This document shows positions 945 through 36,339 of a stretch of 64,000 nt of DNA, in pieces; the stretch's first letter is position 1, and the number at the start of each line of letters is the position of its first letter. Origin of the DNA: Rebecca billardiae RCC1528 (Eukaryota > Protista > Haptophyta); assembly GCA_965240325.2 (NCBI GenBank), contig OZ251222.1, forward strand, positions 3,348,001 through 3,412,000. Reading direction: 5' to 3'. Both the position numbers and the translations under genes were made by a program. The notes beneath the pieces were generated by a model. That model saw only the letters and a program-made list of their open reading frames with translations, was not told the origin of the DNA and searched no databases.

Positions 945-3052
945 CTAGACGCGGCCCACGCCCGTGTGCTGCTGCACGTGCGCTGTCTCGGCGTGCGCGC
1001 CGGCCAAGTGGCCAAGGCTCCCGCACAGAGCGCACTTGGTGGCGTGCGCGAGCGTGAAGTTGTGCTGCATCTGCGCAGACGGTTGGCCGCCGGCCGACCG
1101 GTACGCGGCGAACAGCGGGCACGCCGCCGCGGAGCAGTCGCCGAATAGCTGGTGCCGTAGGCAGCCGTGCGCGCGGAAGACGCGGTGGTTGGCCTCCGAG
1201 AGCAGGGGCCGCCCGCTCGCGTCGCACACACCCCCGTACCGCGCCAGCTCGCGCGCCAGCGTCAGCGGCGGCACGCCCCCCGCAGAGGCGGCGCCCGGGA
1301 ACGGTTGCGGCAGCGTCCGCGGCGGCCCGCCTGGCGGCGGGGGCGGCGGGCCGGGAGGCGGCGCCTGCGGCCCCGGCGGGTACGGCGCCGGTGTGTACGG
1401 CGCCGGCCCGGGCGCCCAGGCCGAACCCGCCGGCGGCACGTACGTGAGCGCGAGCGGCGCGGGCCCGGGCTGCGCCCCCTGTACCGGCGGCGCCGGCGGG
1501 GCCGGCGCTGCCGCCTGCAGCCCCTGCGGGTACGGCGCCGGCGGGCACAGCGCCGGGCGGGGCGCCCAGGACGATCCTGCCGAGGGTGCGCACGTGAACG
1601 AGAGCGGCACGGGCCCGTGCGGCGCCACCTGCATCGGCGCCGACCACGACCAGCAGCCCCACTCCGCTGCGCCGGGCGCCGCCCCGCCAAAGCCGGGCGA
1701 CAGGTCCTGCACCATCAGCGACGGCGGCGGCGGCGGAATCGGCATGCTCCCACCGTAGACGCGCATCAGCGGGCGCATGGCAAACTTGTCATGGAAGGGG
1801 TTGTCGTTCTTGTAGCAGTCGAAGAACGGCTCCCGCCCGCCACCGATGCTCGCCACCAGCGCCGCCACGCCCGAGCGCGCGTCGAGCACCCGCCCGAGGC
1901 TCTCCGAGAATTCAGAGTGGAACTGTGCCGCCGCCCGCCAGTCGCGCGCCTCAGCGAGCTGCATCACGAAGCCCCTGTACTCGCGCAGCACCTCGGCGTC
2001 ACCCGCGCGCGTGCAGAAGCCCTCGGCCTGCTCGACGAGCAGTATGAAGTGGAGCTGGCTGAGGAGCTGGTAGGCCTCGCGCAGCTCGCCCTTCGTGTTG
2101 AAGTAGACGCTTCGATCGACCTGCGCGTGCGGCACCTCAGCCATGTTGAAGGACTCCCAGACGACCGAACCCGCCGCGTTCGCCGGCACGCCCAAGCCGC
2201 GCCGCATGGACGAAAACGCCCCGCGAGCCGGGAAGCTCGGCCTCCCCCCCCCGGTCCCACGGAGTTGGCCGCCCGCGCCGCCCGCGAGCGCGCAAGCGTT
2301 CGCGAACTCGTGCGCGGCCCCCGCAAGGAAGCCAGCCCCACCGAAGGGGACGGGATGCGGCACGAGCGAGCTGGGCGGGGCGAGGGGCGCCGCCGCGTCC
2401 GGCGCCGGCCGGACGCCCCAGGGCGGCGGCCGCGGCGGCGGGACAGAGGTGGGCCCCGTCGGTGCGCCGTCGGCGGGCGGCGCGCCCGAGTGGCCACCGA
2501 CCGCCCCATCACCCGCACCGTTGCCGTGGACGCCGCGAAGGAAGTCAGTGAGGCTGTTCGCGAGGTCGGGTGGTAGGCCAGTCGGAATGCCCGGCTGGCC
2601 AGCGGGCGCGGCCGGGGGGGCGGGTGCCTGCGGCTGCGCAGCAGCCGCCGTCGACGCGGCGCCGGCCGCTCGCCCGGGCGCGGGCGCGGGAGCAGCCCCC
2701 GCCGTCGTCCTGGCACCGGCCGCCGGCGCGGTCGCGGGCGGCGGCTGGACCGGCAGCGGGCCGAGCTGCTGCACCGGCGCGGCAGGCGGCAGGGTACTTG
2801 CTTGGCGGCCACCCGCGCGCCCACCCCGGCCCCGACCGCGGCCCCCGCCGCCGCGCCCACGAGCGCCGAGGACCTGCTGGTTGACGACGCGGCAGGCGGC
2901 AGGGTACTTGCTTGGCGGCCACCCGCGCGCCCACCCCGGCCCCGACCGCGGCCCCCGCCGCCGCGCCCACGAGCGCCGAGGACCTGCTGGTTGACGACGG
3001 CCGCTGCCGCCGCGCGGCGCCGCGACACGCGTTGGACTGCAGGCACCGCCAT
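945..3052 (-). CDS. Gag-like ORF1 with Pro/Ala-rich regions and C-terminal Cys/His knuckles; N-terminus frameshifted by a 110-bp duplication
   Basis: C-terminal CLRHQLFGDCSAAAC...H..KCALCGSLGHLAGAH. It lies immediately upstream of the RT. The ATG at 3052 (MAVPAVQRV) joins the main frame only if one 110-bp copy is removed. Confidence 0.7.
2778..2997. repeat. Perfect 110-bp tandem duplication
   Basis: 2778-2887 equals 2888-2997, with CG microhomology at the junction. Confidence 0.95.
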
Positions 3053-3523
3053 GTCGCCTGTCGGGACGGCGGGAGGCGGAGGAGCGCAGCTGGTTGTCCG
3101 TGCGGCTGCTCGGCGCCAAGCGTGGCCCGTCGGCTGGGTTTGGTAGTCGGGCGGCGGTCCGGTCGGCGGTCGGGCAGGGCGAGGTGCGCCGTGCGGTCGG
3201 GCGGGAAAGCGGACGGCTGCTGGGCGAAACTCGCAGAACTCGCTCCTGTTCGCCAAAGCCGGTCACTGCCCGTCAACTCCCGGCGCGCGCTCACTTTTCT
3301 GCGGTCCGCGCCAAAAGCGAGCTGCCACACGCTCGGAACGCTGTCCGGGGGCGCGCTGCGAGCTCCGAGCTCCGAGCCCGTCCGGGCGGGGGTGCGGTCG
3401 GAGGGGCGCTGGAGGAGGGTATCGGGCGGCGGCGAAGCGGCGCCGGCAGTCATAACGCGATAACCGCCGCAGACTGCCAAACCCGCCACTCCCGTCGCGT
3501 CGGCCATCGCCCCAAAACACTCA

Positions 3524-4545
3524 GGGTCGTTCTTCCGAGCCCCCCCACGCTTTTTCCCCAGCCCGAGCCCGAACATTGTTGTATGAGGACCTATTGCGAA
3601 CGCGGGGGCGTGGAGGCCTCCCCAGGATGACGAAACTTGGCCGGGACCAAGTGTTGTTGGAAATCCAAACAACACTTGGTCCCGGCCAAATTTCGTCACA
3701 TACTATCTCGTCCCGAAAGATCGCAGGACGGAAGCTTCTGTGACTTCCAACATCGGCCCACGAGAGGGTCGAGAGCATGCCGTGCGTGCGTGCGGCGGTC
3801 GGCGGAGACAAGTACGACCGGCGCGTTCGCGCGCGCGCTCGTATGCTCGGCGGCGGTGGTGTTGAGGCTGGCCAGTCACGTGTGACGCCTGGCTGCGCTC
3901 GCGTGCTTGAGCGCAGCTTGTGCGGCGCAAGCCTCCGTTGTGTGATCTGACGTGCGCAGAATGCACTCGTCGCGCCTTGCGCCCGGAGCGTTTGAATTCG
4001 TAGAAGATTTCGACTCAGCCACGATGCACACGGTCGTGCGTGTCTCCAGAAGACACTTACGAGCAGGGCTCGACCGTGGCATGCCCACCATCTCCTCATA
4101 TCATCTCGCTTAGCTGTCTGCGCACACGCGACCAGCTCCACCGTGCTCGGCTGTCGGCGCCCGCTTGCGCGGTCGGTCGGTGGGACACCTGGTTGCCTAC
4201 ATTGCACACACGAGCTTCTCTTTGCAGATCAAGTGTGCGTTGGCGCTCTGACTGCCGCCCCTCGCCGACATCATGCGCACGAGAAGGGCCTGCACGTGCA
4301 CGACAGGGACGCTAGGGTCGCGGGCTGCCCTCGCTGCTTCTCCTAGGCTCCCTTGGACGAGCAGGTGCCGATCCTCCCGCAATCTCAATAGCTACCGGCG
4401 CAACTCCAAAACGGAAAGGAAATGCTCGCAAGAACGCCCGCGGCCCCTCGTTTTGAGCCCGAACATTTTTGTAAGCCACCCTAGACAAATGCTTCAGGAC
4501 AGATACCCGTCTGGGCGAGCTTGCGGGGGCTCGGAAGAACGACCC
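3524..4545. mobile_element. Non-autonomous PIF/Harbinger-type element (1022 bp)
   Basis: 21-bp perfect TIR GGGTCGTTCTTCCGAGCCCCC (3524-3544 / 4525-4545). 3-bp TSD TCA (3521-3523 / 4546-4548) in a C-TCA-G target context. No transposase ORF. Confidence 0.85.
3628..3698. repeat. Long hairpin/palindrome inside the Harbinger-type element
   Basis: 31-bp arms TGACGAAA(C/T)TTGGCCGGGACCAAGTGTTGTT with one mismatch; 9-nt centre GGAAATCCA. Confidence 0.9.
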
Positions 4546-5329
4546 TCAGCCTCAGCAGTAAGGTCTGGCGTTTGCCACTGGCGACTGCACACGGCAACAG
4601 GGGCGTTTGCGCCCTGTTGTCGTGTGCACACTGGGGCGCAAAAGGGGTCACCCTCAGGGGGTTTCGCACTGCTGTTGCCGTGTGCACCGGCCCGCTGTGG
4701 CCGTGCACACGGCAACAGGGCGCAAACGGCCCTGTTGCCGTGTGCAGGCGTGCATGGCTTGCGATGGCAGCCAGCCGTCAGCAGGGCGCCACGCCCACTG
4801 TTCGTTGGTAGGCTGGCCCGATGGCGTCGCGGAGCTCACGCGTACGGGGGAGGAGGGCATCGACGAGGAGACGACCAAGGGCGAGAAGCAGCAGGGGGCA
4901 CGCAGCACGGGGCTCGGAGCATGCCGCGAGCACGCGTGCCTCCACACCGTCGCACATCAACCTTGCTCGTAGCTGTGCGCTGTGCTGCCACTCATCTCAC
5001 CATCGCCCATGCTACGGGCGCGGCCGGGTGGTGGGCATCTACCTGTCGGCGCAGCACTGGCACCGGTGGTCGCCAGACACTCCTCGACTTGCTCTGCGCG
5101 TCACAGCAAGGAGACGGCAGCGGCACAGCTGTGTGAGCTCACAGATGAAGTGCTCCTCTGCTTTGCGAGGCTGAGAGGCTGAGCACGCGTGGCGAGCGCT
5201 GGCATTCCCCCGCATTCATGAGACCAACAGGTACATAGCCGTGCCCAGGAGCGCAGGACCAACCGCCGGGTGCTGCTTCAAACACCTGCGCCCCACTCTG
5301 CCGGCAGAATGAGGGGCGCTCTACTCTAT

Positions 5330-24840: not shown

Positions 24841-24993
24841 CGCTGCTTTTCCTTCACCCACCGGCCGGCCGGCCTCCATCAGCCTCGATCCCGCAGGAGC
24901 CCGCAGCCGTCCGAGCGCCCACGGCTGGCGACGAGCATGGCGCCGGCCCTCCCAACATCCCGAGGCGGGCAAGGCCGCTTCTCGCGTCGAGGG

Positions 24994-25947
24994 ATGAAGT
25001 TGCCATGGACAAAGAGTGAGGCGAAGGCAGGCACGAGCACGCGCTTCCCGTCGTTGGCCTCCCGACTTCCAGGCAGGCGCAAGCGACCGGTTGGCGGTGG
25101 AAGCATGAGCGGTGGCGCAGGTGGCTCAGAGCTTGCGATCTCTGCAAAGAAGCACTCGCTGGGAATTCTTCTCGTCGTGATTTGTCTCGTTGATGGCATC
25201 AGTGGCTTCATCTTCGTCATCTTGGCTGCCAGCCTGTGGGTGGCAGCTGCATCGCCTGATGACTTGGACGGCCCTGTCAACTCCTCGGCCTCCTCGGCCG
25301 ACGACGGCTTTGACAATGATGAGGGCCAAGAGCGGGGCGAGGACGCGCTCTTCGCCGATGGAGTGTCGTCAGGCGAGGCCGGTGCGCTTGGGCTCGTGCT
25401 CTTCGTTCTCGGCGCATTCATGCTCGCCATCGCCACCATCACCGCCTCGGCGGCGCGCGGGACCGGGACGCGTACGCGGTGCGAGAGGCTGAGCTCGATG
25501 GCGCTCACGTCGTCTGCGTGGCTCACGCTGCCCCGCGCAACGGCACTGCTGGTGCTGTGCTTCTACGCGCTCGTTCGAGCGCCGAACGCCAGCGCGCTCC
25601 TTTGCCGGCACAGCGACGCTGTGCTCCGCGGCTGCACATCGAGCCCCCGGCTCGTGGGCAGCCTGTTCGCCCTCACGCTCGCTGCCGTCCAACTGTGCGA
25701 GCTGTGCGCTGTGCGCGCATTCAACGCGGCCGTGCGCGCAAGTGCGGAGCGCTATGCGCAGATGACCGAGATGGAGAGCATCACCGATCGTATTGCGCGT
25801 GAGGAGAGGCGAGCCAACATCTCCTCGAAGCACAACGCCCTTCGTGAGAAGTACCGCGCGCGCGGCTGGATTCCGAGTGACGGCGCAGACGCCGGTGGAG
25901 CTGCTCATGCTGGCGGCACGACAGCAGCAGCGGCGACAAGGGCCTGA
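24994..25947 (+). CDS. Four-TM tetraspanin/TOM2A-like membrane protein (start uncertain: 24937, 24994 or 25105)
   Basis: Four hydrophobic segments, an acidic loop and a charged C-tail containing LREKY. Confidence 0.55.
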   Translation: MKLPWTKSEAKAGTSTRFPSLASRLPGRRKRPVGGGSMSGGAGGSELAISAKKHSLGILLVVICLVDGISGFIFVILAASLWVAAASPDDLDGPVNSSASSADDGFDNDEGQERGEDALFADGVSSGEAGALGLVLFVLGAFMLAIATITASAARGTGTRTRCERLSSMALTSSAWLTLPRATALLVLCFYALVRAPNASALLCRHSDAVLRGCTSSPRLVGSLFALTLAAVQLCELCAVRAFNAAVRASAERYAQMTEMESITDRIAREERRANISSKHNALREKYRARGWIPSDGADAGGAAHAGGTTAAAATRA

Positions 25948-26160: not shown

Positions 26161-28722
26161 TCACTCAAACTCGGACCACGAGAAGCCATCCGCCTCTGGC
26201 GCGAGGGAGAAGAAGACGTGGTCGCGGATGGGGTCCTCGGGGTCGATGCCAAGCCGCTCGTCCTTGGCGACGGCGACGAGCTGCGCGACAAACAGCTTGA
26301 GGTCCATCGACGCGTGCGCCATCTCCATCACACGCGCCGAGCGGTCGGGCCGGTCCCGGATCGCGGCGTACACGCTCTCGACGGTCGGGCCGTCGAAGAG
26401 GCGCTGTGTCGTGACGAGCTCGTAGATGACGCAGCCCAGCGCCCAGTACTCGGACGCGAACGAGTAGTCGCTCGCGGTGACCACCTCTGGCGCCATGTAG
26501 GGCGGTGTGCCCACGCGCGTCGCCTGCTCGGCCTGCTCGGTGCTCGAGTTGCGACGGACCGCCGCGCCCCCGCCCGAGCTGCCGCCGTCCTGCACGGCCT
26601 GGCCGACCGAGTCAAGCGCCGAGACGCCGACCGTGGTCCCGAGGCCCTGCGAGTTGGAGCTGCCCCGGCGCACGTAGAAGGACTTGGCCTTCGCGCCGGC
26701 CTTGGAGGGCGAGGACGGCAGGGCGGGCGAGCCCGGCGAGCCCGGCGAGCCGCCGCCTTCCGAGTCCTTCAGCTCGAGCGTGTTCGGCCGCTGCGCGAGG
26801 GAGACGGCGTTGGGCGTGGGGTCGATGGGCGCGGTGTCGCGCGTGGCGCCCTTGCGCACGCACAGCGCCCTGCGCATCGCGCCCGGGCTCTCGAAGGGCG
26901 GCAGCGGCCCCTCGGCGCCGTCCTCGGCCGCGCGCGCCTTGCTCGAGTCGGACGCGCGCCGCGGGGCGGCCGGCCGCAGCCGCGAGGTGGACATCGAGAC
27001 GCGGCGCTCCGCCTGGCGCTCGTCGGCGGCGGAGGGCGTGGGCACGGCGGGCGAGTCGGCGGCGGGCGCCGCGCCGCTTGCCTGCAGCGCCGCGGCGGCC
27101 GCCTCTCGCGCGAAGCAGCTCGGCCGCATCGTCGCAGAGTTGCTGCGCGAGCCTCGGTTGGACGCCGACACGGCGCGCGACTTGCGCCGCGCGCGCGCCT
27201 CCGCGCGGTAACGGTCGCGCACGGCGATAAGGGCGGAGCTGAGCGCGGCGCTCGCGCGGTCGAGCCTCGCGTCAGACAGCGGTGCAAAGAGGAAGTCCTG
27301 CACCAGGCCCTGCTCCAGCCAGCCCAGCACCGCGGAGAACGGCACGCTGGCCGCGGCGGCGCGCGGCTCGGCGACGAACGAGCCGCCGGCCTGCCGCTCC
27401 GCGTGCTCCGCGCGCTCCAGCCGCACCTGCAGCACCGCGGAGTCGACGGTGGCCGCGCGCAGCGGGCTGGGCGGCACGGCCGCCCGGGTGGGCATCAGCT
27501 GCGGCGAGCGCCCCGTCGCCGGCGAGTGCTGCTCCGCGCTGCGCGGCACGAGCACGACGATCGGCGAGTCCGCGTGGGAGAGGAGCCAGCGCACGGGCGG
27601 GGAGCGCTGCGGCCGCAGCGGGTCGAGGCCCGAGGAGGCGGCCGGGGAGCCGCCGACCCCGCCGCCGTTGGGCGCGAGGCGCAGCTCGTGCGGCTCGGCC
27701 AGCTCGCTCGCGTCGACCAGGATCACGTCTGCGATGATGCGCGTCATCGTCGGCCCGCTCGTGTGCAGCTCGTGCAGGTGGGACAGCGAGTTGTACGGGC
27801 TGACGACCACGCCGAGGTCGGTGAGCACGAGCGCCGTCTCTTGCGCGTTCGGGCTGACGAGGACGACGCGCATGATCGGCTGCGCGCTCGCCGAGTGCGG
27901 CCGCGCCAGCGTGCCCGACTTTGCGACCGAGTGCGTCCAGCGCGGGCCCATCACCTTCTGAAGCGTCGTGAGCGCACCAAACGCGCCCAGCTCGGGCACC
28001 GACGGGCGCCGCTGCGCGAGCGGCGAGGGCGCGTCGGCGCCGCCGGCGGCGTCGGCGCCGGCGGCCGCGGCGGGCAGCTGCATCGGCGGCGGCGGCGGCT
28101 CGCTGTTTGCGCGCTGCATCGGCGGCGAGGGCGGGTCGCCGTGCGCGCCCTCCTCCGCGAGCCCCTGCACAATCACCGAGAGCCCAAAGTCGACGATCTT
28201 GATCGTGTACTCGCCCACCAGGATGGCGTTCTCCGGCTTGATGTCGCGGTGCAGCACGCCCAGCGAGTGGATGCACTCGAGCGCGAGGACGAACTGCGCG
28301 GCGATCTTGCGCACCGTCGCCTCGGGCACGCGCACAAAGCGCGGCCGGTTGCACAGCTCGGAGAGAGGCACACCCTTCACGTACTCGAGGACGAGGTGGA
28401 TCGTGTCCGCCTCGGGCACGACCTGCAGCAGCCGCACGATCTGCTTGCCGCGCAGCGAGGCGAGGATCTTGAGCTCCGCCTGCACGTGCTCCATCTGCAG
28501 CGTCGACTTGCGCAGCGTCTTGATCGCCACGCGCTCGCCGGTCGTCATCGACGTGCCAAGCCGCACGCGCGAGAAGGCGCCGCGCCCAAGCGGCCGGCCG
28601 ATGATGTACTGCAGGTGCAGCGTGGTGGGCGCGCCGTCCGAGACGGAGAGCGAGTCCTGGCCGGTGCGGTGGTACGCGAACACCACCAGCACCGCCTCCG
28701 TCGCGACGGGCGCGCTCGCGCC

Positions 28723-28759
<37 letters not shown>

Positions 28760-31700
28760 CCAAACGAGCCCCCGAGCGCCTCCGCCACCGAGCGCGCGAC
28801 CAGCGGCGAGCCGCGCCCGCCGGCGACGAGCGGCGAGCCGCGGCGCGCCGAGCCCGAGCCGAATGAGCCGTCGCCCTTCGCGCCGGGCGTCTCGAGCGAC
28901 AAGCGCGCGCCGCGGCTCAGCCGCGACTGCCGGATCTCCTGCCGGATGTCCTTGGAGCCGCGCGCGCCGCGCGCCCCGGCCGCGGCGTGCGGCTGCGGCA
29001 GCACGACGCGCTCGTCGTGCACGCGCGCGATGCGCGCAAAGCACAGGCGCTGCTTGAGCGGGCGCGAGAGCGCGGCCGCCTGCGCGCCCGAGAGCACCAC
29101 CGCGACGCCCAGGTCGCGCGTCGACGGCTCGGCGCGCTCGAGCGTGTCGAACGGCCGGCCCCACGCGCAGTACGCCAGCCGCTCGCCCGCGACCAACACG
29201 CCTCGCACGAGCGTGCCGTAAGTGATCGAGACCGTCACCTGCAGCCCGACGCGGTGCCGGTCGTTGAAGAGCTGCAGCGCGCGCTCGAACTTGTCGACGA
29301 GGAGCAGGCACGTCTGCAGCGCCTCGTTCAGCGCGCGCGGCTCGAACGGCGCCTCGTCGTCCGCAGGCGCGGGCAGCTGCCTGGCGGCCGCGCCCGGCGA
29401 GCCCGCGCCCGCGCTGCCGCAGCGCTCGGCCGCGCCGCCGCCGCTCGCCGCCGCGCCGCCGCGGCCGCTGCCGCCGTTGCCGCCGGCCGCCGTCCCGCAC
29501 GCGCTGGGCGGGTTGGACGGGTTGGACGCGGAGCAGAACGACGACGGCAGGGACGCGGGCTCGGAGGTGTGCTCGTGGCGCGAGTGGAAGGAGGAGGCGC
29601 GCACGTCCCGATCGTCCGCGCCCGCGTGCCTGAACCTGCCCGAGGCACACTCGGGAGAGCCCGAGCCGGAGCCGCTGCCGCCCGCGCCCGCGGAGCGCGG
29701 GGTGCGGAGCGGCGGGAGCGTCGAGAGCGCGCTCGTGAGCGAGTCCTGCCGGCTCCCACGCCCGCCGGACGGGGCGGACGAGACGACCGAGTTGACGCGC
29801 TCGTCACGCGAGCCGGAGCGATCCTCGCGCGGGCCTGGCGCGGGCTCTGCGGCGCGCGTGCGCGCCGGCCGCCTCGGCGTCGGGTGGACGAGCAGCAGGT
29901 ACTCGGAGCTCAGCCCGAACGTGCTCGCCTTCTCGCAGCGCGCCGTGTCCTCCAGCAGCGCGTCGAGCATCGCGTACAGCTCGGTGTACACGGTGAGCAC
30001 GTCCGAGGCGGAGAGCAGCTTGTACAGGGACGCCTCGCCCGCGAGCCGCACCGCAATCAGCCCCGTGTCCACCGCAGCCATGTCCGACTTCTCGAGCGCC
30101 GAGAGCGTGAGCGGGAAGGAGCGCGGCAGCAGCGAGCGCTGCAGGGCGAGCTCGTTGCGCACGCGCTCCGCGAGCTCGGCGCGCGCGACCGCCCCCTCCA
30201 GCTCCGTCCAGACGAAGGAGACGGCCTCGCCCGCGCTCACGTGCTTGGCGTGCGCGCTCAGCGCGAGCGCGAGCGCGCCGCCGCCGAGCGCGCGCGCCGC
30301 GAGCGAGCCGCCCTCCGCACCCGCGTGCAGCTCGAGGGCGCCGCGCGCCGCGAGCGCGCCCGCGAGCGCGCCCGCGCCGCCGAGCGCGCCCGCGCTCGCC
30401 GCGCCGCCGTGGCCGAGCACGCTGAGCGCGGGCAGCTTGGCCGCCGCCCACAGCAAAAGGGCCGTCCACGCGCCGACCGCGACGCGCAGCGCGGCGTGCG
30501 CGGCCGGGTGGCGGTCGTCGAGCAGCAGGACGAGGCACAGGGCGCGCGCGAGCGCGAGGGCGCACAGCGCGCACAGCGCCGCGCCAAACGCGTGCGCACC
30601 CGCGCGCTCGGCCAGCGCGCGCCCCGCCGCCGCGTCGGCGAGCGGCTGCTGCTCGGACGCGCCCATGCGCGACGCGGACGTCGGGCTGCTGCGCTGCGCC
30701 GAGCGGGCCGGTGAGCCGAGGAAGCGAGGGGACGCCATCGAGGCCGAGGCGAGGGAGGCGGCGTCGTCCGCCGTCGCCGAGCGGGCGGGGGAGCGCGGGC
30801 GCTCCACGCTGCTGCTGCCGCCCGTGTCAGACATGCGCCCGAGCGTGCCCGAGCCGCTGCCCAGCGCGAGGTGCTCGTCCGACTCGCGCGGACTCGGCGG
30901 CGCGGGCTGGACGCCTGAGGCGCGGCCACTTGCGAGCCGGCTGACTGCGGGCTCGGAGGAGGCGAGGACGCGCGCGACCGCGCGCGGCATCTGCGGCGAA
31001 GGGACGAGCGGGGCGCTCGTCGTCGCCCAGGACACGCCGTCGCCGGAGGAACACGCGCCCGCGCTGCCGCGTGAGTCGCGCCCGGCCGCCACGCCGCCGC
31101 CATGGCTGCCGGAGCGCCGCTCGGCGTCGCTGCCGCCCGACGCGCCGCACGTCGCCTCCGAGACGCGCTCCCAGCGCAGCTTGCGCGACTGCGAGCCGGT
31201 CGCGCCGGACGCGGTGACGAGGCGGTATCGGTCGGTGAGTACCGCGACAGGCGCGGAGGTCCGCACCGAGCTGCTCGCGCGGCGCACCGCGCGCCTCAGC
31301 CTGCCGAGGGCGGCCAGGATGCGCAGGCGCGCCGAGGGCGGCACCGCGCGCACGAGCCGCCCGCCGAGCGCCGCGCCGAGCGCCATCGCGCCGAGCATCC
31401 CCACCGTCGCCCAGAGCAGCGCGGCGTGCACGGCGCGCAGCGCGTGCGGGGCGGCGCTCGCGCAGAGGCCGCGCGCGCACGGGTCCGCGCCCGCGAGCGC
31501 GAGCAGCGCGAGCTGCAGCGCGGCGCTGAGCGCGATCTGCACGCGCGGCTCGTCCGCGCCCTCACAGACCCACAGCACGTGCGTGCGCATGCGCTGCGCC
31601 AGCCGCTCGTGCACAAAGTACGGGTCGATGGCGAGCCACAGCGCGGAGGCGGCGCATGGCGCGCGCAGGCGGAGTAGGAGGCGCGCGCGCACGTTCGCGC

Positions 31701-34700
31701 TCAGCCAGCGGTGCAGCGCCGCGTTGGAGGAGGAGGACGCCTCGTGAGCCCCCCGGCTGCGCTCGGGCTCGGCCGCGCCGCCCTGCCCGCGCAGGGCCGC
31801 CTGCACCGTCACCGCCTTGTGCGCGCTCGAGCCCTCCGCCTCGCTGGCCACGCTCGTCCGGTCGCTGCGCGAGCACGACATGGAGCCGTCCGCGCCCGGC
31901 GAGACGAGCAGCTCCGAGGAGGCGGAGGGGAGGGCGAGCATCGAGCCGGGCGGCGAGGAGGGCGTCGAGGGCTCGGCGAGAGCGAAGCGCACGCGCCCGG
32001 TGGCGGACGCCTGCCGCTCGACCCCCGGCTCGACGCCGCTTGGCGCGCAGCCGGCGGTGCTCGCCGCGCACGCGGCCATCGCCGCGGCCGGCGACGTCAC
32101 GCCGCCGCCACCGCCGTGCGCACTCTCGCCCCGGAGGCTCGCCGAGCCGCCGAGTGCCGGCGCGTCGACGTCGGCGCCGCCCGACGCCTCTCTCTCGATC
32201 AGCAGCGGCGACGGCATGCCGAGCGGCGAGGGCGCAATCACCGTCTTCGTCGCGAGCGCCGAGAGCTGCGGCGAGGCGAGCGGCGACGGCCGACGCCCGG
32301 CCGCGGGCGAGATCCGACTCGCCGGCGGGCGCCGCGGCGGTTTGCCGAAGCTGCCCCCGCCCGCGAGGTCGCCGAGCGCGTCCGGCTCCGCCTCGTCCCG
32401 CACCTCGTCCCGCACCTCGTCCGCGCCAGCCCCCAGCTGGAGCGTGATGGTCGGGGAGCCGGGCGCGGGCGGGTCGAGAGAGGCGAAGGACGGGCGATCG
32501 GACGTGCCCGTGGGTGAGTTGGGCTCGGCGGAGCGGGCGCTCGCGCAGCTCTCGCGGCGCGTGCTGCTGCAGCTGCCGCGCCCGCTGCCGCCGGCGGCTT
32601 CGCAGCTGTCGCGCCGCGAGCTGAGGCCGCTGCCGCGCGCGCTGCCGCGGCCGCTGCCGCCGTTGTCGCGCTCGGCCTCTGCGCCGCCGGGCACGCTCTC
32701 CGCGTCGTCGGAGCTGTTGCGAGAGCGCCTGGCGAACGTGACCGTCCCCTCGCCCTGCGCCTCCGCCCGGGTCGGGTCCTCGCTCGTGCTCCGTCGCAGG
32801 ATGGAGGGCGGGTTCGGGTGTGACGAGCCGGCCGACGACGAGGGCCGCGGCGAGGACGGAGTCACGCGCACCGACGTGCCGGCGGCGGCAAGGAGGCCGC
32901 GGCCGAACGAGAGCTGGCGCCCACGCCCGCGGCCCGGGCTGGTCGCGCGGCCCGGGCTGGTCGCGCGGGCTGGGCTCGTCGCGCGCCCCGGGCTGCGACC
33001 CCTCGCGCCGCGGCCCGGGCTCTCCGCGCGCACCGCGCCCTCGAGCCACGCCTGGTCGTACATGGGCTCACGCCAGAGCGCGCCGCCCTCGGGCTCAGAG
33101 AGGAGCGCGGAGGAGGCGAGCGAGAGGTCGGCCTCGCGCTCGTGCAGCAGCGCGCGCGCGCGCTCGAGCCGCGAGGTGAACGCGATGCCCGATGCCGAGG
33201 CCGCGTGCGTCAGCACCGAGGGCGGCGGCTGCGTGCGCCCACCGCGCCGCGCGAGCGCGACTCCGTCTGAGACGGTGCGCGCCGCGCGCGTCGCGCCACG
33301 ACGCGAGAAGGGCGAGTAGGGCGCCTTGGGGCCCTCGCTGGCGCCGTGCGTGGCGGCGCCCGCGTCGTCGGGCTCGGCCGACCTGCCCGGCGCCGGCTCG
33401 AGCTCGTCGTCGAGCACGCCCACCACGAGCAGCCCCGTGGGCACGAGCAGCACCTCTGACAGCACCGCGTGCAGCTGCTGCAGCGAGGGCGGCACCGCCG
33501 AGCTCGCGCCCGAGCCCGGGCTGAGGTTGGGCTCGGCGCTCCCCGCCTCCGCGCCCGCGAGGAGCACCGCGCTGGCGGCCGTGGCGCGCGTGGACGCGTC
33601 GGCGAAGGTGCGCAGCTTGAAGCGCGACTCGCGCTCGCGCTCGCGCAGCAGCGCCGCCGTCGTCTCGGTGAGGATCACCCCGCTCTGCTTGCGCCCGAGC
33701 TCGCGCGCCACCGCGGGCATCAGCCCGGAGAGGGCGGACGCCGCCTTGACCGCGTCGCCCCACACGCCGAACGAGGCGCCGGAGGTGGAGAGCTTCGAGG
33801 CGAAGCCCTCGACGACGTGGCCGCAGTGCAGCCCGATGCAGATGTGCGAGCCCCACCATCCGTCCGCATCCGCCGCGCCGCCGTGCGCCGCGCCGCCCGA
33901 CGCCGAGGTCGGCTCAGCGCGCTCCGGGACGGTCGCGGCCTCCGTGCCGAAGAGCATTCGGTGCGTGCGCACGACGGCCATCGCCGCCTCGAGCCCCGCG
34001 ATCACGTCCTTGCTCGGCGAGCTCCGCGCCGAGCGCGACGTCGCGACGAGCGCCGTGCTCGAGATCTGCACGAGCGCGAACTTGTGCCGCGAGAGCTGGC
34101 GCTGCGCGACCGTGAAGAGGTGGGCAAGCAGCTCGGCCGTGCGCAGCGCCATCTCGCGCGAGGAGCCGAAGCGCACGTTGAGCCCGTGCACGCGGCAGTG
34201 CAGCACGACGACGAACTCGTGCCGCAGCACGAGCGGCGTGTTCGACTCGCCGCCGTCGTCCGCGCCCGCCGCCGTGCGCGCGCGCCGTGCGGCGACCTCG
34301 TCGAGAACGGCCGTGTACGCTGAGCGCGGCAGCGTGACGGCGAGCAGCCGGTCCGCCTTGTCCGCGGCGGTCGCCAGGTCGTGGCGCGCCTGGCGCGTCT
34401 CGAGCGAGATCTGCGCGCGTGATCCGGTCAGAGAGCCACGCCGACGGACCAGGTTCGCGCGCGCGCGCGCGCGCGCGCACAGCGGGCAGGGAGCCGGGGT
34501 AGGCAGGTGCGCGGGTGAGCGTGCCGTCAGGACGTGGCAACAGGTGCGCGCGCAGAGCGCGCGAGCCGCGCGTGGCGGGGCGGGCCGCGGGTGTGCCGCG
34601 CGCGCGCACCACGAAGTACAGGCGCTCTGCGCGTTCTCGCGAGAAGGCGACCGTGCCGACGGCGCTCACGAAGAGCGCCAGCGCGCACCAGCCGCCGCAG

Positions 34701-35236
34701 GTGTCAAAGAGCGACGGCAGCGCGGCGCTCGGTGTCGACTCCACCACCGCCTGCACCGCGTGCGCGCCGTAGCCGATCGTGGTGAGGGCGAGGAGCGGAA
34801 GGGAGTGCCGCACGACGAGAGGAGACGACGCAAGCGCCGCCTTCGCCGCGAGCGGCGGCAACGTGTCCACGAGCAACGTGGGCGCCTCGTACAGGCGCTC
34901 GAGCGCGACGATCAGGATGATGGTGAGCGCGTGCGGCACGGAGGCGCACAGCTCGCACGAGCGGAGCGAGAGCCTGAAGCGCTGGCTCCACGCCACACTC
35001 GAGGAGAATCGCTCGAGGAGAAGCCAGGCGGCGACGATGTGCCATGCGCTCAGGCCCAGCCTCTGCTCTGAGCGGAGCGCGCCACCCGTCGGTGGGCTCA
35101 CCAACGCTGCGGCGAGTGCCCACGCCGCCATGAGTGCGTCGAAGGCCAGCGAGGTGGCGCGGCATCGTCGGCGCCTATACAACGCCTCCTGGTCCTCGTC
35201 GTCAAAGCACAGGAGCCCGGGCGGCGCCGCCCACAT
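26161..35236 (-). CDS. Giant membrane protein: TM bundle - class III cyclase-like - TM bundle - cyclase-like - Ser/Thr kinase with a very long activation-segment insert; exons 35236-34610 and 34410-26161
   Basis: A 199-bp GTGCGC...GCAG intron gives ERAERLYFV|ISLE...ADRLLAVTLP. Cyclase-like motifs IGLHCGHVVEG...FGVWGDAV and VSITYGTLVRGVL...AYCAWG. Kinase motifs GRGAFSRV, VAIK, HRDIKPEN, DFG and GTPPYMAPE. Confidence 0.85.
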
Positions 35237-36339
35237 GCCGGGCCGGCGCCTCGCAAGCCGCGCCACACCAGGGCCGGGGCACTGCTGCTAGCCGCACCGT
35301 AACCTGCGTTTACTTGCTTGTGAGGGCTGGCGCCTGGCAGAGGCGCCCCCGTGCAGGCGTGCACTCCTGTGCGAGTGTGCGCGTACCCGCTTTATCTGGT
35401 ATATGATAGATACTCGCGCGGGTGAAGTAGTCAAAACAAAACTTACGGGTATGCTGGCTTATAGGGGAATTTAAAAAGGGTATGCTGGCTTATTCAGCGG
35501 TCGTAACGCTACTATCATATATTCTGGAAACCCACGAGAACAAAGGCACGACTTCACGCTGGGGACCCAGTAAGGTCTGGCGTTTGCCACTGGCGACTGC
35601 ACACGGCAACAGGGGCGTTTGCGCCCTGTTGTCGTGTGCACACTGGGGCGCAAAAGGGGTCACCCTCAGGGGGTTTCGCACTGCTGTTGCCGTGTGCACC
35701 GGCCCGCTGTGGCCGTGCACACGGCAACAGGGCGCAAACGGCCCTGTTGCCGTGTGCAGGCGTGCATGGCTTGCGATGGCAGCCAGCCGTCAGCAGGGCG
35801 CCACGCCCACTGTTCGTTGGTAGGCTGGCCCGATGGCGTCGCGGAGCTCACGCGTACGGGGGAGGAGGGCATCGACGAGGAGACGACCAAGGGCGAGAAG
35901 CAGCAGGGGGCACGCAGCACGGGGCTCGGAGCATGCCGCGAGCACGCGTGCCTCCACACCGTCGCACATCAACCTTGCTCGTAGCTGTGCGCTGTGCTGC
36001 CACTCATCTCACCATCGCCCATGCTACGGGCGCGGCCGGGTGGTGGGCATCTACCTGTCGGCGCAGCACTGGCACCGGTGGTCGCCAGACACTCCTCGAC
36101 TTGCTCTGCGCGTCACAGCAAGGAGACGGCAGCGGCACAGCTGTGTGAGCTCGCAGATGAAGTGCTCCTCTGCTTTGCGAGGCTGAGAGGCTGAGCACGC
36201 GTGGCGAGCGCTGGCATTCCCCCGCATTCATGAGACCAACAGGTACATAGCCGTGCCCAGGAGCGCAGGACCAACCGCCGGGTGCTGCTTCAAACACCTG
36301 CGCCCCACTCTGCCGGCAGGCTGAGGGGCGCTCTACTCT

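What the first reader, a model, noticed from the sequence alone, without database searches (positions are those of the whole stretch)
26161..35236. Membrane adenylyl-cyclase-like architecture with two apparently dead cyclase domains fused to a protein kinase
Seen in sequence: a TM-cyclase-TM-cyclase order like transmembrane adenylyl cyclases, followed by a kinase with intact catalytic motifs. Both cyclase-like domains lack the metal-binding Asp (VLHCRVHG and IAVRLAG instead of FxDIxGF). Both also lack the canonical transition-state N...R motif (WGDAVKAASAL and WGRPFDTLER instead of GDTVNxASR). Inference: a pseudo-cyclase pair acting as a nucleotide or conformational sensor that controls the kinase. 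This is the reverse of receptor guanylyl cyclases, where a pseudokinase regulates an active cyclase.
Basis: partly seen in the sequence, partly recalled or inferred. Interest (0 to 1): 0.78.

Follow-up and report, generated by a model that had tools for sequence, protein, structure and literature searches.

The report
Dead cyclase scaffold fused to kinase
A very GC-rich alga encodes a 2,958-residue membrane protein built like a 12-helix adenylyl cyclase, but both cyclase domains have lost their catalytic residues and the chain ends in an intact protein kinase; only one other sequence like it turned up in billions searched.

Summary
On the minus strand, a two-exon gene (35236-34610 and 34410-26161, GT-AG intron 34609-34411) encodes 2,958 residues. 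The order is membrane block, cyclase-homology domain 1 (CHD1), a disordered linker of about 620 residues, a second membrane block, CHD2, then a Ser/Thr kinase split by a 546-residue insert.

One ortholog (P0001, a Logan contig) has the same order, the same intron position and the same C-terminus. Its domains are conserved and its linkers are scrambled.

CHD2 is a class III cyclase domain by Pfam, profile-profile comparison and reciprocal search. CHD1 falls below the Pfam threshold, but language-model features, profile alignment and a confident AlphaFold model all support it.

Neither domain keeps either metal-binding Asp, in either species. CHD1 keeps 0 of 6 canonical catalytic residues. CHD2 keeps only the transition-state Arg, which is Lys in the ortholog. 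All kinase motifs are intact.

The best reading is a receptor-like kinase that reuses a dead cyclase scaffold as its membrane-coupled input module. That mechanism is inferred, not shown.

The receiver-like look of the kinase insert got no statistical support. I rate it a new variant of a known kind, of moderately high interest.

The parts
34610..35236 (-). Exon 1 (model residues 1-209): short N-terminus plus the first membrane block, with hydrophobic segments between residues ~25 and 201
   Evidence: ATG at 35236 and 209 codons. GC1/2/3 is 0.67/0.55/0.89. Hydropathy peaks. Aligns with the upstream ORF of the ortholog contig, L001 83-727, including the shared RERAER.YF ending. No Pfam hit.
34411..34609 (-). 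GT-AG intron, 199 nt, phase 0
   Evidence: The sequence starts GT and ends AG and restores the frame. Base composition is flat by codon phase, 0.81/0.79/0.80. The ortholog has a 228-nt GT-AG intron at the same codon position, L001 728-955.
34303..34359 (-). Helical stretch before CHD1 (residues 227-245, KADRLLAVTLP...), resembling a cyclase-transducing element
   Evidence: Conserved between the orthologs. It contains an xLP centre; CTE_1 of mammalian cyclases has SxL/MP (PMC9552081). The match is by inspection only.
33598..34230 (-). CHD1, cyclase-homology domain 1 (residues ~270-480), catalytically degenerate
   Evidence: Pfam Guanylate_cyc 18.4 bits, E 0.0017, below the cut-off. Atlas features 0.96 with 176 shared, and 27 of 30 hits are Guanylate_cyc. 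hhalign of the C-terminal half against 121 cyclases gives 70.7%, E 3.8e-5. AlphaFold with a cyclase alignment gives pLDDT 80.8 and pTM 0.78. Best Foldseek hit is 1azs_A, the adenylyl cyclase C1 domain, E 1.5e-9, TM 0.74 by target. Catalytic positions read R282, T328, Q324, G424, K431 and A435.
31738..33597 (-). Linker 1 (residues 481-1100): low-complexity Ser/Gly/Ala/Arg/Pro-rich region, in the position of C1b in mammalian cyclases
   Evidence: GC3 is 0.93-0.96, so it is coding. Only 35% identity to the ortholog, with 255 residues unaligned. No credible Pfam hit.
30247..31683 (-). Second membrane block (residues ~1119-1597), with a loop of ~250 residues between its early and late hydrophobic segments
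   Evidence: Hydropathy peaks fall at 1163-1188, 1199-1230, 1478-1510, 1511-1545, 1544-1568 and 1577-1597. The late helices are 50% identical to the ortholog.
30094..30165 (-). Helical stretch before CHD2 (residues 1625-1648, ...NELALQRSLLP...), resembling a cyclase-transducing element
   Evidence: Almost invariant between the orthologs. Its SLLP centre fits the SxL/MP pattern quoted in PMC9552081. The Pro lies ~26 residues before the first-metal position, as in the bacterial cyclase P0034. The match is by inspection.
29023..30075 (-). CHD2, cyclase-homology domain 2 (residues ~1655-2005), catalytically degenerate, with a disordered insert of ~175 residues (29353-29877)
   Evidence: Pfam Guanylate_cyc 23.9 bits here and 34.6 bits in the ortholog, against a cut-off of 21.9. 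hhalign against cyclases gives 96.4%, E 1.1e-9, 38% identity over 76 columns. The only non-ortholog hits of its profile in 1.84 billion representatives are two true cyclases. Atlas features 0.95. Catalytic positions read R1664, L1710 or S1875 depending on the alignment, C1957, D1964 and R1968. The AlphaFold model from 2 sequences failed, pLDDT 34.
28162..28620 (-). Kinase N-lobe through DFG (residues 2140-2292)
   Evidence: Pfam Pkinase positions 2-149. The G-loop GRGAFS, VAIK, the alphaC Glu, HRDIKPEN and DFG are all present. 78% identical to the ortholog. The best solved relatives are CAMK and AGC kinases.
26524..28161 (-). 546-residue insert between DFG and APE (residues 2293-2838)
   Evidence: It lies between the two Pkinase stretches. 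GC3 is 0.94-0.99. Identity to the ortholog is 28-43%. No Pfam family at E up to 10 for residues 2385-2625. hhalign against four receiver domains gives 0.15%.
26164..26523 (-). Kinase C-lobe (residues 2839-2958), followed by the stop codon at 26161-26163
   Evidence: GTPPYMAPE and the C-lobe match AGC kinases (PKN2, PKA, GRK5, PKC) at E about 1e-9. 73% identical to the ortholog, which ends at the same position.

Best explanation
This is one gene for a multi-pass membrane receptor-like Ser/Thr kinase whose input module is a complete but catalytically dead transmembrane adenylyl cyclase scaffold.

Shown: the chain runs membrane block 1, CHD1, long disordered linker, membrane block 2, CHD2, then a kinase with a large insert between DFG and APE. 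Both CHDs have the class III cyclase sequence signature. CHD1 also has a confident cyclase-fold model. Neither CHD has either metal-binding Asp, and together they keep at most one of the twelve canonical catalytic positions. The kinase motifs are intact. The domains, and the helices that lead from each membrane block into its CHD, are conserved between two diverged species while the linkers are not.

Inferred: CHD1 and CHD2 pair head-to-tail, like C1 and C2 of mammalian cyclases, but make no cyclic nucleotide. A signal sensed by the membrane helices would pass through the two transducer-like helices and change the geometry of the CHD pair. That change would be relayed through the ~130-residue linker to the C-terminal kinase, which phosphorylates unknown substrates. 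The two degenerate inter-domain pockets carry conserved basic residues (R1664 in CHD2, K431 in CHD1) and could bind a small anionic ligand. Nothing here tests that.
For: Gene model: exact GT-AG intron and frame. GC3 is 0.85-0.99 across the whole of exon 2, against a flat intron. Ortholog P0001/L001 has the same order, the same intron position and the same C-terminus.

CHD2 identity.

CHD1 identity.

Loss of catalytic residues in both species.

Constraint: amino-acid identity is 73-78% in the kinase, 61-71% in CHD2 and 49-65% in CHD1, against 22-36% in linkers. dN is 0.25-0.30 in CHD2 against 0.8-1.1 in linkers.

Kinase: motifs are intact in both orthologs.

Transducer-like helices: LP-centred helices are conserved before both CHDs, and the literature treats such elements as the membrane-to-CHD relay in cyclases (PMC9552081; PMC4821796, listed).
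Against: CHD1 is below the Pfam threshold in both species (18.4 and 12.4-15.5 bits). Its AlphaFold model was built on an alignment made mostly of true cyclases, so the fold is not an independent result.

CHD2 could not be modelled (pLDDT 34), and its N-terminal half is aligned by inspection; MAFFT placed the second-metal hairpin elsewhere.

CHD1-CHD2 pairing, ligand binding and control of the kinase are untested. dN/dS for CHD1 is high (0.7-0.9), although dS is compressed by extreme codon bias. Only two sequences exist, so conservation statistics are thin.
Confidence: 0.55

Rival explanations
1. The CHD pair is a structural relic that only anchors or dimerises the protein. The kinase would be regulated by other means, such as phosphorylation of or binding to its 546-residue insert, with no signal passing through the cyclase-like domains.
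For: All catalytic residues are gone. CHD1 is only moderately conserved, at 49-65% identity. Large inserts between DFG and APE are regulatory in Greatwall/Rim15-type kinases (established knowledge; the fungal RIM15 proteins are the top non-ortholog hits).
Against: CHD2 and the helix before it are nearly as conserved as the kinase, at 61-71% identity with an almost invariant pre-CHD2 helix. That is more than a passive spacer would need. The kinase insert itself is as poorly conserved as the linkers, at 28-43%.
Confidence: 0.25
2. The gene model is wrong. The 8.25-kb open frame would be partly a by-product of GC-rich sequence, and the locus would really give two or more transcripts or proteins, for example a cyclase-like membrane protein and a separate kinase.
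For: There are no RNA data. GC-rich DNA here yields ORFs of up to 882 aa in non-coding frames. No annotated protein for this gene is on record.
Against: Third-position GC is at least 0.85 in every 40-codon window of the frame, whereas the true intron is flat. The ortholog keeps all domains in one frame despite hundreds of residues of indels in the linkers. There is no in-frame stop in either species. An internal promoter cannot be excluded.
Confidence: 0.08
3. One or both CHDs still make a cyclic nucleotide or carry out another nucleotidyl-transfer reaction using non-canonical residues, so the protein is a bifunctional cyclase-kinase.
For: The fold and the GxxxxG/WGD core are retained. CHD2 keeps the transition-state Arg and has Cys at the base-specifying position, as guanylyl cyclases do. 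Conserved His/Cys residues sit at the former metal site of CHD1.
Against: Both metal-binding Asp positions are replaced in both domains and both species, by Arg/Gln, Thr, Arg, and Leu or Ser/Cys. The two-metal mechanism of class III cyclases needs these residues (established knowledge). The Arg is Lys in the ortholog.
Confidence: 0.07

Closest known systems
Mammalian-type transmembrane adenylyl cyclases (class IIIa pseudoheterodimers: TM1-CTE-C1-C1b-TM2-CTE-C2)
   Same: The order of parts is the same: a membrane block, a helix with an xLP centre, a cyclase-homology domain, a long non-conserved linker, then a second membrane block, helix and cyclase-homology domain (PMC9552081). The best structural match of CHD1 is the C1 domain of 1azs.
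   Different: Both metal Asp residues, the substrate-specifying pair and the Asn are missing. The Arg survives only in CHD2. A protein kinase is fused at the C-terminus. Sequence similarity to solved cyclases is too low for HMMER to detect. The helix count per membrane block is not established.
Receptor guanylyl cyclases (ligand domain - one TM helix - pseudokinase - active cyclase)
   Same: A kinase-fold domain and a cyclase-fold domain share one membrane protein, and one is an inactive regulatory copy of an enzyme (established knowledge).
   Different: The roles and order are reversed: here the cyclase domains are dead and N-terminal, and the kinase is intact and C-terminal. There are two multi-pass membrane blocks instead of a single helix with an extracellular domain.
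[quoted passage not shown]
   Same: These are cyclase-kinase fusions in membrane proteins of protists, so a cyclase-kinase fusion as such is not new.
   Different: Their order is kinase-cyclase-kinase with a single cyclase domain, not a 2x(TM-CHD) scaffold. No sequence relative of that kind came up in my searches.
Greatwall/Rim15-type kinases
   Same: The kinase domain is split by a very large insert exactly between DFG and the GTPxYxAPE segment. Fungal RIM15 proteins are the best non-ortholog matches among long proteins, at 40% identity over the N-lobe.
   Different: The N-lobe scores higher against CAMK-group kinases (CIPK24 86 bits, MELK 81 bits) than against Greatwall (71 bits). The chain ends 8 residues after the kinase core, with no AGC tail. 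Family membership is not established.
P4-ATPase-guanylyl cyclases of alveolates and stramenopiles
   Same: They are another protist lineage in which the 2x(6TM-CHD) cyclase scaffold is fused to a second large module (PMC6592433 and PMC13466520, listed).
   Different: There the partner is an N-terminal flippase-like domain and the cyclase is active. Here the partner is a C-terminal kinase and the cyclase is dead.

Membership tests
Class III nucleotidyl cyclase, catalytically competent | Cyclase-homology domain (Pfam PF00211 signature and fold) | tested here: met
   CHD2 scores 23.9 and 34.6 bits against a cut-off of 21.9 and gives hhalign 96.4%. CHD1 scores 18.4 bits, below the cut-off. It is supported by Atlas 0.96, hhalign 70.7%, a model with pLDDT 80.8 and Foldseek E 1.5e-9 to 1azs_A.
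Class III nucleotidyl cyclase, catalytically competent | Two metal-binding Asp residues in at least one domain of the dimer | tested here: not met
   In CHD1 the two positions are R282 (Gln in the ortholog) and T328. In CHD2 they are R1664, plus L1710 or S1875 depending on the alignment.
Class III nucleotidyl cyclase, catalytically competent | Substrate-specifying pair (Lys + Asp/Thr for ATP, Glu + Cys for GTP) | tested here: not met
   CHD1 has Q324 and G424. CHD2 has Ser or Glu at the Lys position and C1957 at the second position. No complete pair is present.
Class III nucleotidyl cyclase, catalytically competent | Transition-state Asn and Arg (GDTVNxASR) | tested here: not met
   CHD1 has K431 and A435. 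CHD2 has D1964 and R1968, with Lys at the Arg position in the ortholog.
Transmembrane adenylyl cyclase architecture (TM1-CTE-C1-linker-TM2-CTE-C2) | Two membrane blocks, each followed by a cyclase-homology domain in one chain | tested here: met
   Hydropathy blocks lie at residues 25-201 and 1119-1597, and the CHDs at about 270-480 and 1655-2005.
Transmembrane adenylyl cyclase architecture (TM1-CTE-C1-linker-TM2-CTE-C2) | Six helices per membrane block | tested here: inconclusive
   Kyte-Doolittle windows give about 5-6 segments in block 1 and 6-7 in block 2. No dedicated topology predictor was available, and there are no Pfam hits to these blocks.
Transmembrane adenylyl cyclase architecture (TM1-CTE-C1-linker-TM2-CTE-C2) | Conserved cyclase-transducing element before each CHD (centre SxL/MP or NxLP) | tested here: inconclusive
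   VTLP (ATLP in the ortholog) precedes CHD1 and SLLP precedes CHD2. Both lie in helices conserved between the orthologs, and the pattern is taken from PMC9552081. This is inspection only; no CTE profile was available. The spacing to CHD1 is longer than usual.
Active eukaryotic protein kinase | Gly-rich loop, VAIK Lys, alphaC Glu, HRD, DFG and APE motifs | tested here: met
   Pkinase scores 171.5 bits. All motifs are read directly and are identical in the ortholog.
Greatwall/Rim15 kinase family | Large insert between DFG and APE | tested here: met
   The insert is 546 residues, 2293-2838.
Greatwall/Rim15 kinase family | Closest sequence relatives are Greatwall/Rim15/MAST kinases | tested here: inconclusive
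   RIM15 proteins lead among long proteins. CAMK-group kinases outscore Greatwall among solved structures. The C-lobe is AGC-like. No tree was built.
Greatwall/Rim15 kinase family | AGC C-terminal tail after the kinase core | tested here: not met
   Both orthologs end 8 residues after the conserved Trp that follows HVFF.
Receiver (CheY-like) domain inside the kinase insert | Sequence match to Response_reg and a conserved phospho-acceptor Asp | tested here: not met
   No Pfam family at E up to 10. hhalign against four receiver domains gives 0.15%. The candidate acceptor Asp (ILVD) is Ser in the ortholog. A fold-level test was not run.
Receptor guanylyl cyclase | Extracellular ligand domain, single TM helix, pseudokinase N-terminal to an active CHD | tested here: not met
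   The domain order and the activity status are both reversed.

The most novel reading that the evidence does not exclude
An entire 12-helix adenylyl cyclase has been converted into the sensing and transducing input of a Ser/Thr kinase. The membrane helices would bind a ligand, and the dead CHD1-CHD2 pair would convert that into a conformational change, or bind a nucleotide-like ligand in its basic degenerate pockets, to switch the kinase. This would be a natural case in which cyclase membrane anchors and transducer helices signal with no cyclic nucleotide made. It would bear directly on the debated receptor role of cyclase membrane anchors.
Probability: 0.3. Interest if true: 0.8.

Novelty: new variant of a known kind. 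Interest (0 to 1): 0.6.

Why it matters
Pseudoenzyme domains that regulate an active partner are well known for kinases, the pseudokinase of receptor guanylyl cyclases being one example. I found no description of the opposite arrangement, a full transmembrane cyclase scaffold with both catalytic domains dead, placed upstream of a live kinase.

The dead domains and the helices coupling them to the membrane are conserved between two diverged algae. That argues the scaffold still does something other than make cAMP or cGMP.

If that role is signal transmission, the protein is a natural experiment on whether the membrane anchors and transducer helices of adenylyl cyclases are receptors. The readout would be phosphorylation, which is independent of cyclase chemistry. 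It also adds a signalling architecture to haptophyte-type algae, whose signalling proteins are poorly annotated. This gene has no annotated product on record.

Tried and rejected
An exact-product look-up of the big ORF found nothing.

2. Solved structures by sequence. Two-sequence profiles of CHD1 and CHD2 found no cyclase in the PDB. They gave only weak, spurious designer-PPR hits of 9.5 bits per domain.

3. AlphaFold of CHD2 from the two orthologs alone failed, with pLDDT 34. Both folding jobs are now used, so CHD2 has no usable model.

4. hhalign of full CHD1 against two cyclases, and of CHD1 against CHD2, gave nothing. Only the larger 121-sequence cyclase profile and the C-terminal half gave signal.

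5. More relatives. Word searches over lengths 1479-4706 and 454-1445 aa, an exhaustive profile search of 1.84 billion representatives with CHD2 and a metagenome scan found no family member besides P0001. Fragments shorter than 454 aa, and sequences clustered under P0001 at 50% identity, could have been missed.

6. Receiver domain in the kinase insert: no Pfam or hhalign support.

7. Greatwall/Rim15 membership: left open.

8. MAFFT placed the second-metal hairpin of CHD2 in the low-complexity insert. I prefer the ortholog-conserved RCEKASTFGL..EYLLLV segment. Neither placement gives an Asp.

9. Joined protein. It was not sent to any database search; exons and domains were searched by reference. 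The joined translation was used only inside local scripts for numbering, hydropathy and one local HMM scan, whose matches all lay in exon 2.

10. Literature. Searches found no description of this architecture. The nearest case is the amoebozoan kinase-cyclase-kinase family.
Full report
**What is there.** The window is 60-81% GC. On the minus strand, an ATG at 35236 opens a 209-codon exon that ends at 34610. A 199-nt GT-AG intron (34609-34411) follows, then a single open frame from 34410 to the stop at 26161-26163. The product has 2,958 residues.

**Is the frame coding?** A long ORF means little in such DNA, because other frames over the same stretch give ORFs of up to 882 aa. I therefore tested the frame two other ways.
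- Composition: third-position GC is 0.92-0.99 in 150-codon windows and at least 0.85 in every 40-codon window of exon 2, while second-position GC is 0.43-0.77. The intron is flat at 0.81/0.79/0.80. The low-complexity linkers are therefore coding, and no sizeable hidden intron is likely.
- Comparison: a word search with CHD2 plus the kinase N-lobe found one strong relative, P0001 (2,598 aa, E 8e-140), on an 8.9-kb Logan contig, L001. It has the same domain order in one frame and ends at the same residue.
- Its membrane exon lies upstream in another frame. The break sits at the same codon as here: exon 1 ends ...RERAER.YF+1 followed by GTGCG, and exon 2 begins 16 codons before [D/Q]KADRLL. The L001 intron is 728-955, 228 nt.

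**No transcript data.** The single-transcript model rests on comparative and compositional evidence alone.

**The cyclase-like domains.** Pfam Guanylate_cyc is the only family that hits either segment.
- CHD2 scores 23.9 bits here and 34.6 bits in the ortholog, against a cut-off of 21.9.
- CHD1 scores 18.4 bits here and 12-15 bits in the ortholog, below the cut-off.

For CHD2 the assignment is firm.
- Profile-profile comparison with two true cyclases gives 96.4% probability, E 1.1e-9 and 38% identity over 76 columns.
- An exhaustive search of 1.84 billion representatives with the CHD2 profile returned only the ortholog and two proteins. Pfam calls both of those cyclases, at 90 and 83 bits.
- Language-model features point to Guanylate_cyc at 0.95.

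For CHD1 the evidence is weaker but consistent.
- Language-model features give 0.96 with 176 shared features.
- hhalign of its C-terminal half against a 121-sequence cyclase alignment gives 70.7%, E 3.8e-5.
- MAFFT aligns the whole domain with cyclases in the expected register.
- AlphaFold on that alignment gives pLDDT 80.8 and pTM 0.78, with the expected strand and helix order.
- The model's best matches are cyclase catalytic domains, led by the C1 domain of 1azs (E 1.5e-9).

The CHD1 model leans on an alignment made mostly of cyclases, so it shows compatibility and is not independent proof. CHD2 could not be modelled from two sequences (pLDDT 34). Neither domain is close enough to any solved cyclase for HMMER to see it.

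**Are they dead?** I read each catalytic position off the alignments with about 100 cyclases in which those positions are 88-100% conserved.

| Position | CHD1 | CHD2 |
|---|---|---|
| First metal Asp | R282 (Gln in ortholog) | R1664 (both species) |
| Second metal Asp | T328 | L1710 (my placement) or S1875 (MAFFT's; Cys in ortholog) |
| Substrate Lys | Q324 | Ser or Glu |
| Substrate Asp/Thr | G424 | C1957 |
| Transition-state Asn | K431 | D1964 |
| Transition-state Arg | A435 | R1968 (Lys in ortholog) |

The CHD2 readings for the Asn and Arg positions also appear. No domain in either species can supply the two-metal site, and that holds under either alignment.

**Are they still under constraint?** Amino-acid identity between the two species, by segment:

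| Segment | Identity |
|---|---|
| Kinase lobes | 73-78% |
| CHD2 halves | 61-71% |
| CHD1 halves | 49-65% |
| Late helices of membrane block 2 | 50% |
| Linkers, CHD2 insert, kinase insert | 22-43% |

Hundreds of linker residues cannot be aligned at all. dN is 0.25-0.30 in CHD2 against 0.8-1.1 in linkers. dN/dS ratios are inflated because codon bias holds dS down, so I rely on the relative values. The helices leading into each CHD are among the best conserved stretches. They carry an xLP centre: TLP before CHD1 and SLLP before CHD2. That resembles the cyclase-transducing elements described for membrane adenylyl cyclases, whose centres are SxL/MP and NxLP (PMC9552081). I matched these by eye only.

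**Membrane blocks.** Hydropathy gives about 5-6 segments in residues 25-201 and about 6-7 in residues 1119-1597. The second block is interrupted by a loop of about 250 residues that is much shorter in the ortholog. That fits a 6+6 design but does not prove it.

**The kinase.** Pkinase scores 171.5 bits in two pieces. The Gly-rich loop, VAIK, alphaC Glu, HRDIKPEN, DFG and GTPPYMAPE are all present and identical in the ortholog.
- The two lobes are separated by 546 residues, exactly between DFG and APE. That is the position of the large insert in Greatwall/Rim15 kinases, and fungal RIM15 proteins are the best non-ortholog matches among long proteins.
- Among solved structures, however, CAMK-group kinases outscore Greatwall for the N-lobe. 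The C-lobe looks AGC-like, and there is no AGC tail. I leave family membership open.
- The insert was noted separately by the scan as receiver-like (s1-358069). I found no Pfam match at E up to 10 and no profile match to four receiver domains. The candidate acceptor Asp is Ser in the ortholog, and the region is only 28% conserved. No fold-level test was run.

**Relatives and literature.** No other family member appeared in any of these searches:
- proteins of 1479-4706 aa or 454-1445 aa;
- the exhaustive CHD2 profile search;
- JGI metagenome contigs.

No gene product for this locus is on record. Shorter fragments, and sequences hidden in the P0001 cluster, could have been missed. Paper searches found no description of this architecture. 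Cyclase-kinase fusions as such are known: Acanthamoeba and Physarum have large families of membrane proteins with one cyclase domain between two kinase domains (PMC4758236). Earlier AI notes from this scan call the genome a pavlovophyte (haptophyte) alga and report cyclase-type 6TM modules fused to other outputs elsewhere in it. I did not check either claim.

**How it most likely works.** What is shown is a single chain joining a transmembrane-cyclase-like scaffold that cannot cyclise nucleotides to an intact kinase, with selection acting on both.

The rest is inferred. CHD1 and CHD2 would pair like C1 and C2. The membrane helices would sense something, and the transducer-like helices would pass that to the CHD pair. 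The pair's conformation, or a ligand bound in its degenerate and rather basic pockets, would set kinase activity.

I put 0.55 on this overall. The anatomy alone is about 0.85; the control mechanism is about 0.4. The rivals are:
- a passive anchoring or dimerising relic (0.25);
- a wrong gene model (0.08);
- residual non-canonical catalysis (0.07).

**Verdict.** This is a new variant of a known kind: a pseudoenzyme module regulating an active enzyme, built from known domains in an arrangement I could not find described. Interest 0.6.

Noticed in passing
window 27163-27885 (-), model residues ~2385-2625: This part of the kinase insert looks receiver-like by eye. It has no Pfam hit at E up to 10 and no hhalign match to four receiver domains. 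The candidate phospho-acceptor Asp (ILVD) is Ser in the ortholog, and the region is only 28% identical between the two species.
   Followed up: partly
window 34180-34221 and 33727-33843 (-), model residues 280-284 and 404-407: CHD1 carries His/Cys-rich motifs conserved in both orthologs: LHCxxH at the former first-metal site and GxHCGH in the following core strand. They might form a different metal or redox site. Distances in the model could not be measured with the tools at hand.
   Followed up: no
window 28720-28776 (-), model residues ~2088-2106: A run of about 19 consecutive Gly codons lies in the linker between CHD2 and the kinase. It is absent from the ortholog.
   Followed up: no
window 32917-33018 (-), model residues ~674-707: Linker 1 contains a tandem peptide repeat of SPGRAT/SPARAT units followed by GRGRGR. 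It is not present in the ortholog.
   Followed up: no
window ~35445-35495: Just upstream of the start codon, in a locally AT-richer stretch, the 16-mer ATAAGCCAGCATACCC (minus-strand reading) occurs twice about 30 nt apart. It could be a promoter element or the end of a mobile element.
   Followed up: no
window 26218-28866 (+) and other frames across 26161-35266: Many long ORFs of 400-880 aa overlap the gene in other frames and on the other strand. They are by-products of the stop-poor, GC-rich sequence and show no coding GC3 pattern.
   Followed up: partly
window 24937-25947 (+): A 336-aa ORF with several hydrophobic segments converges on the 3' end of the gene. It is probably the neighbouring gene.
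   Followed up: no
L001 1-8942 (Logan SRR30872636): The only ortholog lies on a genomic-looking contig that still contains the intron, at 73% GC and with GC3 of 0.86. It comes from a different and clearly diverged organism, 45% identical overall. Its identity is unknown.
   Followed up: partly
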